From Vicugna vicugna (lineage: Eukaryota), in the NCBI GenBank assembly GCA_013265495.1, contig MU061814.1, forward strand, positions 6,017,684 through 6,081,683: DNA of 64,000 nt, read 5' to 3'. The notes beneath the pieces are model-generated. The model ran no database searches and was not told the DNA's origin. It worked only from the letters and a program-made list of their open reading frames with translations. This document shows positions 249 through 26,460 of this stretch, piece by piece (the first letter of the stretch is position 1; every line of letters begins with the position of its first letter). The position numbers were made by a program, and so were the translations under genes.

Positions 249-7460
<7,212 letters not shown>

Positions 7461-7863: not shown

Positions 7864-8272
7864 GCTGCTGGCACTACTGGGATGGGGTCTGCGTGGCCTA
7901 GGCAGGGTGGTGGGTTTGAGGGTGCCGGGAAGGATGGGATGGATGTCTTGGCAGTCTCCCTCCCACCTGGTTTCAGTGGCAGGTGTCTCCAGGGGCTTTG
8001 TCCCAGTTTGTCCGTAGGCGGGGTGCTGCTCCCCCCTTCCACCCTCCCACTGCCAGGCCTGGGAAGGGGGCCATGAGCTGCCCATGGTGCTTAGGGGCCC
8101 TCACAGGACCACCCTTCCCCTGGGCTCTGGGGAGGTGGGGGCCAGAACTGGGTCAAAGCCTAGGCCCCTGGTCGCTGACGTCTCCCCTTGGCGGGCAGGG
8201 GAGGGGCTCCCGTGGAGGCGCAGCCAGGCCGGCCCTTACACGACCTGGAGGCCCCGTTGCTCCAGCGAGACC

Positions 8273-9743
8273 ATGAGGGGCCCTCCTTGGTCGCTGCCAT
8301 CCCTGCCGCTGGCTCTCGCAGCCCACGGGGCGGCAGGGGACACGCCCACCTACCCGTGGCGGGACCTGGAGGCAGGGGAGTGGCTGGTGTGCAGCCAGTG
8401 ACCCCCAGGCACCTTCAAGCAGCAGCCTGAAGACCGGGACAGCCCCACGACGTGCGGCGCGTGCCCGCCCCGCCACTAACATAATTTTGGAACTACGGGG
8501 AGCGCCGCCACTACTGCAACGTCATCTGCATGGAGCGTGGGGAGGCGGCGTGGCCGTGCAGGGCCACCCATAACCACGCCTGCCGCTGTCGCCCCGGCTT
8601 CTTCGCACACGGCAGCTTCTGCCTGGAGCACACAACCTGCCTGCCCGGCGTCGGCATGGCTGCCCCGCTGGGTGCGGGTGCGTGGGGCCGCCGTGCCAAG
8701 ACCTCAGCTGAGTGAGGACGACCCCGGCTCTCCTGACCCCGTAATCTGTCCTCGTCCTCAAGCACCCGCAGCCAGAGCACGCAGTGCCAGCCGTGTCCCT
8801 GGGCACTTTCTCAGCCAGTAGCTCGAGCTTGGAGCAGTGCCAGCTGCACCGCAACTGCACAGCCTGGGTCCAGCCTTCAACGTGCCGGACTCCTCCTCCC
8901 ACGAGTCCCTGTGCACCAACTGCATGAGCTTCCCACTCGGCTCCAGCAAGCTGGGGGCGCCGGGTGAGCCGGAATGGGGTGTGGAGCCCCAGCTGTTGGG
9001 TCCGAGGCCAGCCCTGGAGCGTGAGGCCTTGGCTGGCTCCCGGGAAGGGCTTCCAGAAGCCATGTGGGTTCAAAGGGCACCAGAGCCCCACGGAGCCAAC
9101 CTCGGAGAGCTCTGGGGCGGTGGGGGTGGCCCAGGGAATGCACCTTGCAGAGGGTTTTAGCGCTGGTGGGTGATGCCATTTCCCGCCGACATCGGGAAAC
9201 AGGCTCAGAGGGTTTAAAGGCCTTCCACGAGGTCAGGGTGGTGAAAGGGGCCGAGCCCCTTAGCGTCCCATCTCGTCCCTGGCGTTGACCCACGAGCCCC
9301 GCCCCCAGCCCGCCTCCCTGCTGCCGGAAGTTCCGCGGCTGCGGTGGACCCGCCACCACAGCTCAAGCCTCGCCCACTTGTTAGCCCACAGGGGTTCGTT
9401 CCTCCTTTGTTCTGTCCTCACCACCCCCTGCCCACAGAGCCTAGCGAGGACCTGACTGAGCCCCCACCTCGCCACACCCTCCTACAGGGACCAGGGAGTG
9501 CGAGCGGGCCCTTGTCGACTTCGTGGCTTTCCAGGATCTCTCCGCCCAGAGGCTCCTGTGGCTGCAGCAGGTCCTGACCAGCCTAGGCACGGAGCCCGCC
9601 AACGCCACTGCCGCCAGTGGCGAGGGCAGGCCGCACGGCCCTGCGGCTGAGACTGGCGGCAGCTCACGGAGCTCCGTGAAGCGCCGGCCAGGCTGCCCGG
9701 GCTGGAGCGCAGCATCCACGGGCGCTTCCTCCAGGCGCCCTGA
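8273..9743 (+). pseudogene. TNFRSF6B: Decoy receptor 3 (DcR3) unitary pseudogene, three recognisable exons (~8273-8671, ~8762-8963, 9488-9743)
   Basis: Homology: TPTYPWRD, PPGTF, RDSPTTCG, CRCRPGFFAH, QCQPCP, ECERALVDFVAFQD, ARLPGLERSI. Syntenic position between RTEL1 and ARFRP1. Lesions: TGA at a Cys codon (8399-8401); 1-nt deletion plus TAA (8477-8484); exon 2 acceptor AG>AA (8760-8761); 1-nt deletions near 8800 and 8865-8878; two frameshifts and a ~14-codon deletion in exon 3. Confidence 0.92.
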
Positions 9744-9757
9744 GCGCCCTCCCGTCA

Positions 9758-9763
9758 TTTATT
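9758..9763 (-). terminator. Candidate distal ARFRP1 poly(A) signal (AATAAA on - strand)
   Basis: TTTATT on + strand, 15 nt after the TNFRSF6B stop. Confidence 0.6.
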
Positions 9764-10595
9764 CACTCCCGGCCTGGGCCCCCCAGCCGTACCAAAGGAG
9801 GCTTCTGACCTGGTTCCTGGGTCACTTTAGTTTTTATAAAGCGGATTTGTCAGAGTGTGGCGTCTGACCGGCCACAGTGGGCACACCTGGTGGGGAAAGA
9901 CTGGGCAGCCTACCTGAGTGTCCAGCTCTCTCAGGCTGGCCCCACCCCCATCTGACAGACTTCAATGGACAGTGGGTGGCAGCTGTGGGGCGCGGTGGGG
10001 TCCCTGAGGCCCGCTCTGCGATCCCCCATTGCCTGCTCAGCAGGCAGAGCCTTATGGAGGGTGGGCGGCCAAGCCCAGGGGCTCCCACTGCAGAACAGAT
10101 GGCAACCCAGAGCAGTGGGCAGCAGCCAGCAGGCCCTGGGCACCAGAACTCCCACTCAGCCCGGCACTCTCGTGAACTCTGCCCACTTCAAACAGCAGGG
10201 ATTTCCTAGGAAGGGACAGCCAAGGCCTCCTGGGAGGCCAAGGGGTCCCACTGGCTTTCTGGGAAATGAGGCTTTTCCCTCTGGGGCAGGTTCAGAAAAC
10301 GGCTTGACCCACCCACCCAGGGGGACTCTCAGCCTTACCCTTGTTCTGGGAGCCCTCCCTCCACCAGCCCTGGAGCCCCCTGCCTGACCCCCAGGAAGGG
10401 CCCCAGTGAGAGGCAGGGTCACAGCCTTCCCATGAGTCATCCCACCTGCAGCTGGCCTCCACCCCTAGCCCTGACTCGTCCCTTCCTCAACAACTCCCAG
10501 GCCCCACCAGGGAGAGCAGTCTGGGGGGCCTGACCTTCAGAGACAAAGCTACCAGGTCTCCAGAGGAACAATGGACAGGAGCCACTCCAGCTGTC

Positions 10596-23600: not shown

Positions 23601-26460
23601 CTGGCTCTGGGCGGGGGGCCGTGCCGTCCTGGCTGCTCCTGTGGGGTCAGAGCAGTTTCCTCTCTGCAGCGGCGGCACTCAGGGGCTGTGGGTGGCTTTT
23701 CATGTCTTTATTTGGCAGAGTTAAGGCTGCAGCCCTCTGTCCCCGCCCCTCCTCCTCCCCTCCTTCCTCCTCTCTCCCAATTTGCATGTTGATTTCACCG
23801 TTTCACTGATGTCTAGACATCAGGGCCGCGCTGGTACAGCCAGGTCCTCCTGGTCAGCTGGGGAGGACCGAGTCCTGTGAGCACATGCCCCGCCTTGCTC
23901 ACTCATGGTGTCCAGGCCCTGTGTCTGGCAGAGAAACAAGGGGTGCTCTCCTCACAGGGGGGGCTTCCAGCCACACTCTCCCAGGCAGTCCCGCAAAGGA
24001 GCTTGTCCTGGGGGCACCCAGTCCGTCCTGAGAGTGAGAGCTCAAGCACAGGGAGGGAATACACATATGCGTGTGTGTGTGCCTGTGGTGTGCACACATG
24101 TACGTGTGTGCGTGTGTGTGCATGCACATGTGTGTGTGTAACTGTCCTTCCCTCCAGGGCAGCGCCCAGGCAGGTAGACTTGATTCTCCTGGGCCCGCGC
24201 GGCCCTGGTGGGCCATGTCTGAGTCTGCACCCTGCGGCCCTCTCCGCAGGTTCTCCCATGGGCAGGTGGTCTCTGTGGAGGAGTTGCGCCCCTTTCAAGA
24301 CCCAGACCTGAGCTCTCTGCAGGCCGGCTCTGCCTGTCTGGCCAAGCAGCAGGACGGCCTCTGGTACCCAGCACGGATCACTGGTGAGGCTGCCCAGGGC
24401 CTCCCTGACAGGGCCCTTCCTGGGAAGCCCTCTCCATGCGTCACACGCATTGGTCCTGTGTGACCACCCCTTTGGTTGGGCATTGGGACTCCACGCCTTG
24501 GCCAGGAGGAGTGAGACCACCCTTGGCCTCGGCCCCACCCTATTCCTAGCTCCCGTTGTGGCTCTTGTCATGTGTTGAGGCCACTGACCCAGCTGTCTTG
24601 GTGCCCCTACAGATGTGGATAGCGGCTACTACACAGTCAAGTTTGACTCTCTGCTGTTGAAGGAGACCGTGGTGGAGGGGGACAGCATCCTGCCCCCACT
24701 GCGCACGGAGCCCACAGGGTCCTCTGACTCAGACAGCAGCGATGCAGACGACCCCAGCTATGCTAGAGGTATGGCTGCGGCTCGGCCTGGGAGCAGGACG
24801 GCGGGGGCGGGCAGCGTGGGCAGCAGCCACCCCAAGAGACTCCTCCTGGTCAGGAAGAGGATGCATATCAAAGGGGGCGCTGGGTGTGGAAGCCCCCCAG
24901 AGGGGCTGGAGCTGATGAACAAGTGTGGGGCAGGTCTAGGGTAGGTCCAGAGACTCACGGACACAAAAATGCAGCCCTCATCTTCAAGAAGCACGTCAGC
25001 AATTACAGTCCCACAGGAGCCACTGGAGGGGCAGGGAAGAGAGGGATGCCTGGTGCGCATGAAGGAGCAGCTCCTTCCAGTGGCTCCCTTCAGGGCCCAG
25101 GTGCCTGGTGGATGGAGGAGGAGCTGCGTTCAGACAGCTGGAAAGGGAGAATTTCAGGAGGAGGATTGGCTGGCAGTGTCTGGCCCTCCTGAGGGGAGGT
25201 CCCTGTGGGACCTGTGATGTAAGCCAACAAGTGGAGGGGAGCGGAGCCCACTTCCTGGGAAGGTGGGTCAGGAGAAGGGCCGTGCAGGATGGGGCCACCA
25301 TGTGACCAGGTTGTGGCCCAGAAGCATGGAGAGGGCCAGGCTCTGCCACAAGCCCTGCCCATTGCTGTCACCACCACAGCCCTGGGTCACCGGCAGGGAG
25401 CCAGAGGCACAAGGCATCGCAGCCCTAGCCCAGAGCTGAGCTCTTGGGCTAACCCTGGCCAGAGCCCCGCATGCTTTGGACCTGTCTGGGTCAAGCCACT
25501 GCCCTTTGATTGCGTAGTGGTGGAACCCAGCGCTGCTGACCCCGGGACCTGCAGCTCCGCCTTCGCTGGCTGGGAGGTGCACACACGAGGCATTGGCTCC
25601 AGACTCCTCGCCAAGATGGGCTATGAGTTTGGCAAGGGTAAGTGTGTCCTGCACCAGGGAGATGAGGGGGCTCCCGCAGCTCAGCCCGGGTTCCAGCAGC
25701 AGTGCCAGCCCCGTGTCCCCTCAGGTCTGGGCCGACACTCGGAGGGCCGGGTGGAGCCCATCCATGCCGTGGTGCTGCCGCGAGGGAAGTCGCTGGACCA
25801 GTGTGCGGAGATCCTGCAGAGGAGGACCCGGGCCAGCAAGGCCAGCACCAGCAGGCCCCCAAAATGCCGGGGGAGAGGGGTTGGACCTGGGGGTCACCCA
25901 CCCCCTCGGAGCGTGTTCGACTTCCTGAACGAGAAACTTCGGGGCAGGGCCCCCGGGGCCCTGGAGGCAGGGGCCGCGCCCGCAGGGAGGAGGAGCGGCA
26001 AAGAGGTGTACCATGCCAGCAAGAGCACCAAGCGGGCCCTGAGCCTGCGGCTCCTCCAGACCGAGGAGAAGATTGAGCAGACCCAGCGAGTCATCCGGGG
26101 TATCCAGGAGGCCCTCGCCCGCAACACCGGCCGGTACGTGCGGGCCTGGGCTCAGGGCAGGCCCTGGCGTGGGTACCCCGCCCACCATTCACGTGCAAGC
26201 TGGCCCTGAGCAAGGGTGGCCGGTCTGGGGGCGCTGTGGGTTGGAGGATGATGGGAGAGGCCTGGACGGGGGCTGGGCTGCCACGTGCAGAACCCAGGCT
26301 GAATGGCAGGCCCCTCTCTAGGCACAGCGTGACGGTGGCCCAGCTGCAGGAGAAGTTGGCAGGCGCCCAGCGGCAGCTGGGGCAGCTCCAGGCCCAGGAG
26401 GCAGGCCTGCAGCGGGAACAGAGGAAGGCAGACACCCACAAGAAGATGACCGAGTTCTAG
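17495..26460 (+). CDS. ZGPAT: Zinc finger CCCH-type with G-patch domain protein (514 aa, complete)
   Basis: Exons 17495-18081, 24250-24383, 24613-24768, 25518-25637, 25725-26133, 26322-26460. Total 1545 nt, GT-AG. MDEESLQTAL start; CCCH finger CPFFLEGKCRFKENCRFSH; Tudor-like region; G-patch GIGSRLLAKMGYEFGKGLG; ends HKKMTEF*. Confidence 0.97.
18370..23250 (-). mobile_element. Patchwork of old L1 (L1M-type) fragments in ZGPAT intron 2, antisense to the gene
   Basis: AT-rich blocks resembling reverse-complement L1 3' ends (~18400-18700, 19390-19800, 20150-20400, 20880-20960) and ORF2 (~21780-22880, e.g. GGTGGTTTTGGGTATTAGGGACCCATTGTAATTCCGTATCAG). Boundaries approximate. Confidence 0.65.
24058..24140. 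repeat. Imperfect (TG/CA)n alternating purine-pyrimidine tract
   Basis: ACACATATGCGTGTGTGTGTGCC...GCATGCACATGTGTGTGTGTA. Confidence 0.85.

What the first reader, a model, noticed from the sequence alone, without database searches (positions are those of the whole stretch)
8273..9743. Lineage loss of decoy receptor 3 (TNFRSF6B) by at least seven disabling lesions
The lesions are a nonsense codon at the first CRD cysteine, a frameshift plus TAA, loss of further cysteines (~8429, 8506-8508), loss of the exon 2 acceptor, two exon 2 frameshifts, and two exon 3 frameshifts plus a deletion. So many lesions across three exons argue against sequencing error and for an old loss. DcR3 neutralises FasL, LIGHT and TL1A and is known to be missing in mouse and rat. 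An independent loss in an apparent camelid would alter TNF-family immune control. I do not know whether it has been reported.
Basis: partly seen in the sequence, partly recalled or inferred. Interest (0 to 1): 0.75.

Follow-up and report, generated by a model that had tools for sequence, protein, structure and literature searches.

The report
Dead decoy receptor 3 gene, camelids
This New World camelid carries only a broken relic of the gene for decoy receptor 3, a soluble brake on three cell-death and inflammation signals. The oldest breaks are shared with camels, so the whole camel family lost the gene long ago, independently of mice and rats.

Summary
Window 8273-9743 (+) is the three-exon TNFRSF6B (DcR3) gene in its ancestral place, downstream of RTEL1 and upstream of ZGPAT. 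It was aligned base by base with the intact warthog, orca and donkey genes.

- **Lesions found:** two in-frame stops, six frameshifting deletions, a lost intron-1 donor and acceptor, three lost CRD cysteines and a 42-bp deletion.
- **Host:** a Lamini. The window is 99.5% identical to an alpaca assembly and 91% to dromedary and wild Bactrian camel.
- **Age:** seven lesions are shared by Lamini and Camelus: TGA at codon 43, TAA at codon 71, Cys53 loss, acceptor AG>AA, a 1-bp deletion, a 2-bp deletion and the 42-bp deletion. Inactivation therefore predates the split of the family. A rough dN/dS estimate gives about 25-36 Mya.
- **No artefact, no spare copy:** contigs from independent runs and three other assemblies carry the lesions. 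The 2.03-Gb genome has no second copy, only OPG and DR6.
- **Ligands:** the receptor-binding exons of FasL, LIGHT and TL1A are open.

I found no paper reporting this loss. It is a new case of a known kind, since muroid rodents also lack DcR3. This scan has not noted it on other DNA.

The parts
8273..8667 (+). Exon 1 relic: start codon, signal peptide, CRD1-CRD3
   Evidence: Columns of orca exon 1 in the MAFFT alignment. The piece 8485-8667 matches human DcR3 chains at E 1.4e-22.
8399..8401 (+). Nonsense TGA replacing Cys43 (TGC). Shared by window, alpaca, dromedary and C. ferus.
   Evidence: Unchanged in contigs of runs X3, X4, X15 and X18.
8429..8431 (+). Cys53 lost: GAA in Lamini, GGA in Camelus, TGC in outgroups
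8477..8479 (+). 1-bp deletion in the Tyr69 codon (TAC>TA-), which gives an in-frame TAA. Lamini only.
   Evidence: Camelus contigs have the extra C behind 8478.
8482..8484 (+). Gln71 CAG>TAA, a stop in the ancestral frame. Shared by all four camelid sequences.
8506..8508 (+). Cys79>Arg (TGC>CGC). Present in the window and in run contigs X3 and X4. Not in the alpaca assembly or in Camelus.
8663..8666 (+). C-run one base short (frameshift). Seen in the window only and not corroborated.
   Evidence: The alpaca assembly, Camelus and the outgroups have five bases here. X3 and X4 each have one gap that the tool did not list.
8668..8669 (+). Intron-1 donor GT>CT. Lamini only; Camelus keeps GT.
   Evidence: donor1 block; 8667/8668 changes in Camelus contigs.
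8760..8761 (+). Intron-1 acceptor AG>AA. Shared by all four camelid sequences.
   Evidence: acceptor1 block.
8762..8963 (+). Exon 2 relic (CRD3-CRD4)
   Evidence: The intron-2 donor GT is kept.
8794..8795 (+). 1-bp deletion inside the Cys144 codon (TGC>TG-). Shared by all four camelid sequences.
8862..8864 (+). 1-bp deletion in codon 167 (GCC>G-C). Lamini only.
9488..9743 (+). Exon 3 relic (C-terminal, heparin-binding part). Acceptor AG is kept and the ancestral stop TGA sits at 9741-9743.
9584..9585 (+). 2-bp deletion (codon 234). Lamini only; in Camelus this variable stretch stays in frame.
9653..9656 (+). 2-bp deletion across codons 254/255. Shared by all four camelid sequences.
9684..9685 (+). 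Junction of a 42-bp (14-codon) in-frame deletion. Shared by all four camelid sequences.

Best explanation
Window 8273-9743 is a unitary pseudogene of TNFRSF6B (decoy receptor 3) at the ancestral locus of a New World camelid. The gene was inactivated once, in the stem lineage of living Camelidae. It has since decayed neutrally and separately in Lamini and Camelini.

Any translation from the conserved ATG stops after 42 residues, inside CRD1, so no secreted four-CRD decoy can be made. The receptor-binding exons of its three ligands (FasL, LIGHT and TL1A) remain open. Camelids, like muroid rodents, must therefore control these signals without this soluble decoy.

Shown here: the lesions, their sharing between lineages, the absence of a second copy, and relaxed constraint. 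Inferred: absence of the protein, and any effect on immunity.
For: **Identity and place**
- The exon-1 piece matches human DcR3 at E 1.4e-22, well ahead of OPG at 5e-9.
- The RTEL1 HHD domain lies just upstream, and ZGPAT lies downstream.
- In the alpaca, dromedary, warthog, orca and donkey loci the gene sits between RTEL1 (+) and ARFRP1 (-).

**Lesions**
- They were scored against three intact genes whose GT-AG three-exon structure reproduces the annotated proteins.
- Seven lesions are shared by window, alpaca, dromedary and C. ferus.

**Not an artefact**
- Contigs of an independent sample of the same species (X3) and of a sister species (X4) differ by 1 and 4 substitutions, none at a lesion.

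**No spare copy**
- The DNA search finds only the locus itself.
- The protein search finds only this locus plus DR6 and OPG.

**Relaxed constraint**
- Lamini versus Camelus gives omega 0.86. The N:S split of 42:16 is not different from neutral (p 0.65).
- Functional pairs give 0.33-0.42, and the camelid stem 0.55.

**Ligands**
- The TNF-homology exons of TL1A, FasL and LIGHT are open in the same genome.
Against: - Public annotation places a 287-aa (alpaca) and a 289-aa (dromedary) product over exactly this span. I could not see these products. The DNA of both loci holds the stops and frameshifts, so I take them to be models corrected by the annotation pipeline. That is inference.
- Contigs from camel RNA libraries cover the locus, so it may still be transcribed.
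- The run data are Logan contigs, not raw reads.
- One 1-letter gap in each of X3 and X4 was not listed, so it cannot be placed.
- An unassembled second copy cannot be strictly excluded.
- The omega values rest on NG86 with parsimony ancestors and small counts.
Confidence: 0.93

Rival explanations
1. The lesions are sequencing or assembly errors in a GC-rich region, and the gene is really intact.
For: The region is 67% GC. Two window-specific items, the 8663-8666 C-run and 8506, are not seen in an alpaca assembly.
Against: The same stops, splice mutation and deletions occur in three other assemblies of three species and in independent run contigs. Neighbouring genes in the alpaca locus have full-length products.
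Confidence: 0.01
2. This is a dead duplicate, and a working DcR3 copy lies elsewhere in camelid genomes.
For: Assemblies are incomplete: this one has 12,405 contigs.
Against: The relic keeps its introns and sits at the ancestral RTEL1/ARFRP1 position. Whole-genome DNA and protein searches find no other copy, only DR6 and OPG. No camelid appears among the 120 listed of 155 DcR3 proteins found in the public collection.
Confidence: 0.02
3. The coding function is lost, but the locus survives as a transcribed non-coding RNA or as part of RTEL1 read-through transcripts with some regulatory role.
For: Contigs from at least eight camel RNA-seq libraries in two studies hold the Camelus copy. In run X18, one 3.9-kb contig spans both introns unspliced.
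Against: An unspliced contig in an RNA library fits genomic DNA carry-over or pre-mRNA just as well. No splice joints were seen. Sequence divergence in the exons is near neutral.
Confidence: 0.04

Closest known systems
Loss of Tnfrsf6b (DcR3) in muroid rodents: mouse, rat, hamsters, vole
   Same: It is the same gene, lost from a whole mammalian clade while its ligands persist. PMC7498332 lists TNFRSF6B as lost in mouse, rat, Chinese and golden hamster and prairie vole. PMC5477258 states that the mouse genome has no DcR3.
   Different: This is a separate event in a different order, since other artiodactyls keep the gene. A recognisable three-exon relic with datable shared lesions remains at the locus. 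PMC7498332 screened alpaca and Bactrian camel but lists only muroids for this gene.
Intact mammalian DcR3 (human structures 3K51, 3MHD, 4MSV and others)
   Same: It has the same genomic position and the same three exons. It is 66-69% identical at the protein level in surviving stretches, and 16 of 20 conserved cysteine codons are still present.
   Different: It carries two stops, six frameshifts and two dead splice sites. Four cysteine codons are destroyed and 14 codons of the C-terminal part are deleted.
Other unitary pseudogenes noted in this same genome (TRHR2, SSTR4)
   Same: They are the same kind of object: a decayed receptor gene at its ancestral place (earlier notes, not re-tested here).
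   Different: They are different genes. The earlier agents reported those losses as already known or published, whereas I found no report for DcR3.

Membership tests
TNFRSF6B / DcR3 orthologue | Ancestral position between RTEL1 (same strand) and ARFRP1 (opposite strand) | tested here: met
   RTEL1 HHD hit at 6637-6710. The 99.5%-identical alpaca locus and the dromedary, warthog, orca and donkey loci show RTEL1 / this gene / ARFRP1 / ZGPAT.
TNFRSF6B / DcR3 orthologue | Closest to DcR3 rather than to the paralogues OPG or DR6 | tested here: met
   DcR3 at E 1.4e-22, against OPG at 4.9e-9 and DR6 at 4e-3. OPG and DR6 are found elsewhere in the genome.
TNFRSF6B / DcR3 orthologue | Three coding exons with conserved boundaries | tested here: met
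   The exon relics align column for column with orca exons of 397, 204 and 293 nt.
Functional DcR3 protein | Open reading frame encoding a signal peptide plus four CRDs with 20 conserved cysteines | tested here: not met
   Stops at codons 43 and 71, six frameshifts, and four cysteine codons destroyed (43, 53, 79, 144).
Functional DcR3 protein | Canonical GT-AG introns | tested here: not met
   Intron 1 has donor CT and acceptor AA. Intron 2 is intact.
Unitary pseudogene (lineage-wide gene loss) | Disabling lesions shared by diverged members of the lineage | tested here: met
   Seven lesions are shared by Lamini (window, alpaca) and Camelus (dromedary, C. ferus).
Unitary pseudogene (lineage-wide gene loss) | No functional copy elsewhere in the genome | tested here: met
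   for this 2.03-Gb assembly only. Other camelid genomes could not be searched whole.
Unitary pseudogene (lineage-wide gene loss) | Intact orthologue in outgroups | tested here: met
   Warthog, orca and donkey genes translate exactly to their annotated 297-304-aa proteins. Many further mammals are listed.
Unitary pseudogene (lineage-wide gene loss) | Neutral evolution after inactivation | tested here: met
   Lamini versus Camelus omega is 0.86, with an N:S split indistinguishable from neutral (p 0.65). Functional pairs give 0.33-0.42 and depart from neutral at p<2e-4. The method is approximate.
Unitary pseudogene (lineage-wide gene loss) | No protein product | not testable with these tools
   This needs camelid serum or tissue proteomics, or an immunoassay.

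The most novel reading that the evidence does not exclude
Losing the DcR3 decoy in the camelid ancestor, while FasL, LIGHT and TL1A stayed intact, was not a neutral accident. It was part of a lineage-specific rewiring of TNF-family death and inflammation control, and it contributes to the unusual infection tolerance of camelids. Camelids would then be a natural large-animal DcR3 knockout.
Probability: 0.07. Interest if true: 0.7.

Novelty: new member of a known kind. Interest (0 to 1): 0.4.

Why it matters
DcR3 neutralises FasL, LIGHT and TL1A, and it is a biomarker and drug candidate in sepsis, autoimmunity and cancer. Its physiology is hard to study because mice lack the gene (PMC5477258).

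A second, independent and ancient loss in a family of large domestic animals has three consequences:
- The decoy is dispensable in more than one mammalian design.
- It offers a natural knockout to compare with pig, cattle or horse.
- DcR3-based assays or reagents should not be expected to work in camels, llamas or alpacas.

It also exposes an annotation problem. Public gene models over this locus in alpaca and dromedary report a roughly 288-aa product although the DNA cannot encode one. Orthologue tables may therefore hide the loss.

Tried and rejected
- **The search for homologous proteins with the 76-aa exon-1 piece** found no candidates, so it gave no route to gene calls on camel contigs.
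- **Musk-deer DcR3 (P0091)** has no encoding contig on record.
- **Elephantulus locus:** the gene table came back but no DNA.
- **Supplements of PMC7498332** are not held, so I could not see whether alpaca or camel were scored for this gene.
- **Read laying** listed only part of the differences: 72 substitutions and 5 indels were not shown. The Camelus state downstream of 8667 therefore came from the dromedary and C. ferus assemblies, fetched through their ZGPAT proteins.
- **First guess at the host** was Camelus, because the best ZGPAT hit was named C. dromedarius. DNA identity rejected this: 99.5% to alpaca against 91% to Camelus.
- **Pfam on long minus-strand ORFs** expected to hold ARFRP1 exons found nothing. 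ARFRP1 is placed by the alpaca annotation instead.
- **The annotated 287/289-aa products** could not be retrieved. No stored protein carries camelid-specific motifs.
- **N stretches in the C. ferus locus** were left as they are.
- **Structure or complex prediction** was not run, because it would not change the verdict.

Full report
**What is at the coordinates.**
- The three forward frames of 8273-9745 contain DcR3-like pieces that hop between frames and are cut by stops.
- The piece 8485-8667 matches human decoy receptor 3 chains at E 1.4e-22. It is much weaker to OPG (4.9e-9) and DR6, and it touches Pfam TNFR_c6.
- The end of an RTEL1 HHD domain lies upstream on the same strand, at about 6637-6710. 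ZGPAT G-patch exons lie downstream at about 25.7-26.2 kb.
- In warthog, orca, donkey, alpaca and dromedary, the gene at this position sits between RTEL1 (+) and ARFRP1 (-). This is therefore the orthologous, intron-containing locus and not a retrocopy.

**Which animal.**
- A ZGPAT exon is 99% identical to a protein cluster made only of Camelus and Vicugna sequences. The next best hit is 86%.
- At the DNA level, 8123-9893 is 99.55% identical to the Vicugna pacos assembly GCA_048564905.1. It is 91.4% identical to Camelus dromedarius GCA_036321535.1 and 91.5% to C. ferus GCA_000311805.2.
- The window therefore comes from a New World camelid: alpaca or a very close relative. Which of the four Lamini species it is was not resolved.
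- The genome is 2.03 Gb in 12,405 contigs.

**Lesions.**
I recovered the exact GT-AG three-exon structures of the warthog, orca and donkey genes. Each reproduces its annotated protein uniquely. I then aligned the window, alpaca, dromedary and C. ferus to them. The exon relics in the window are 8273-8667, 8762-8963 and 9488-9743.

Shared by all four camelid sequences:
- TGC>TGA at codon 43 (8399-8401);
- Cys53 lost (8429-8431);
- CAG>TAA at codon 71 (8482-8484);
- intron-1 acceptor AG>AA (8760-8761);
- a 1-bp deletion inside the Cys144 codon (after 8795);
- a 2-bp deletion (after 9654);
- a 42-bp in-frame deletion (after 9684).

Lamini only:
- a 1-bp deletion after 8478, which puts TAA in frame;
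- intron-1 donor GT>CT (8668-8669);
- a 1-bp deletion at about 8863;
- a 2-bp deletion at about 9584.

Camelus only:
- a 2-bp deletion at about 8893;
- Cys86>Tyr, in dromedary only.

Window only, compared with the alpaca assembly:
- Cys79>Arg (8506);
- one C missing from the run 8663-8666.

Its one slip is that the nonsense codon replaces the second CRD1 cysteine, not the first.

**Error or real.**
- Contigs assembled from an independent sample of the window's species (X3) cover the whole stretch with one substitution.
- Contigs from a sister species in another study (X4) cover it with four substitutions. None lies at a lesion.
- Each of these contigs has one single-letter gap that the tool did not list. 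The alpaca assembly differs from the window by single-C length changes at 8251 and 8663-8666, so that one lesion stays uncorroborated.
- The shared lesions appear in three further assemblies of three species. Sequencing error is excluded for the finding as a whole.
- These run data are contigs, not raw reads.

**Copy elsewhere.**
- The locus DNA matches only itself in the whole assembly.
- Warthog DcR3 protein finds this locus plus two other places. They are TNFRSF21/DR6 (E 2.5e-123 to its structures) and TNFRSF11B/OPG (E 3.8e-63).
- No camelid appears among the 120 listed of 155 DcR3 proteins found in the public collection, although many other mammals do.

**Age and constraint.**
- Shared lesions place the inactivation before the Camelini-Lamini split.
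- With NG86 counts on the ancestral frame and parsimony ancestors, functional lineages give omega 0.33-0.42. The camelid stem gives 0.55, and Lamini versus Camelus gives 0.86.
- The 42:16 split of non-synonymous to synonymous differences between the two camelid tribes does not differ from the neutral expectation (p 0.65). The functional pairs depart from it at p<2e-4.
- The divergence dates come from my own knowledge, not from a tool: about 55-65 Mya for Tylopoda against other artiodactyls, and about 17-25 Mya for the camelid crown. The usual mixed-branch formula then gives an inactivation about 25-36 Mya. This is a rough figure.

**Consequences.**
- Translation from the conserved ATG ends after 42 residues, so no four-CRD secreted decoy can be produced.
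- The TNF-homology exons of the three DcR3 ligands are open in the same genome: TL1A (E 5e-90), FasL (E 2e-80) and LIGHT (E 2e-78) to their solved structures.
- The decoy alone is therefore gone.
- That this changes immune regulation is inference from the known role of DcR3 (PMC5477258).

**Transcription.**
- Contigs in at least eight camel RNA-seq libraries from two studies hold the Camelus version.
- In X18, one 3.9-kb contig runs unspliced through both introns, and no splice joints were seen.
- This fits DNA carry-over, pre-mRNA or read-through. It does not show a spliced message.

**Novelty.**
- PMC7498332 screened 58 mammals, including alpaca and Bactrian camel, and lists TNFRSF6B as lost only in five muroid rodents.
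- Searches combining TNFRSF6B or DcR3 with camel, alpaca, camelid, gene loss or pseudogene found no report.
- A 2026 review of camelid immunity mentions neither DcR3 nor TNFRSF genes.
- Large orthologue tables that I cannot search may contain the loss.
- Public annotation even gives a 287-aa or 289-aa product at the locus in alpaca and dromedary. The DNA cannot encode this as it stands.
- I rate the finding as a new member of a known kind: a real, old, apparently unreported loss, of moderate interest.

Noticed in passing
L016:779-2250 (alpaca) and L017:662-2115 (dromedary), equivalent to window 8273-9743: The public gene tables give a protein-coding call of 287 and 289 residues, with no Pfam hit, exactly over the pseudogene. 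Both DNAs carry the stops and frameshifts. These are probably pipeline-corrected models that mask the loss.
   Followed up: partly
P0016 (Elephantulus edwardii, GCA_000299155.1, between RTEL1 and ARFRP1): The elephant-shrew DcR3 model is flagged LOW QUALITY. It lacks a signal peptide, reads through intron 1, has five conserved Arg>Cys changes and a scrambled C-terminus, yet keeps all 20 conserved cysteines. Another sengi (Rhynchocyon) has a normal gene. This may be a further decaying copy or a poor assembly; no DNA was available.
   Followed up: partly
window 8236-8242: A TATA-like TTATAGG about 35 nt upstream of the ATG in warthog and orca reads TTATATG in Camelus and TTACACG in the window and alpaca. 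This could be promoter decay.
   Followed up: no
window 8100-9900, runs X15 and X18: Camel RNA-library contigs cover the pseudogene and both introns without splicing. A separate, much deeper contig in X15 begins at 9809 and runs downstream, probably the ARFRP1 3' UTR abutting the relic.
   Followed up: partly
window 6637-6710 (+) and 25727-26158 (+): The RTEL1 HHD-domain end and two ZGPAT exons (G-patch) read open. The flanking genes look intact, so the damage is confined to TNFRSF6B.
   Followed up: partly
L018 (C. ferus GCA_000311805.2), exon 1 region: The wild Bactrian camel assembly has N gaps inside exon 1, and its RTEL1 model runs into the pseudogene region. The gaps were left unfilled.
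   Followed up: no
window 9786 region (3' UTR): Lamini lack about 14-17 bases that Camelus, orca and donkey have just downstream of the stop codon. This accounts for most of the unlisted inserted letters in run X18.
   Followed up: no
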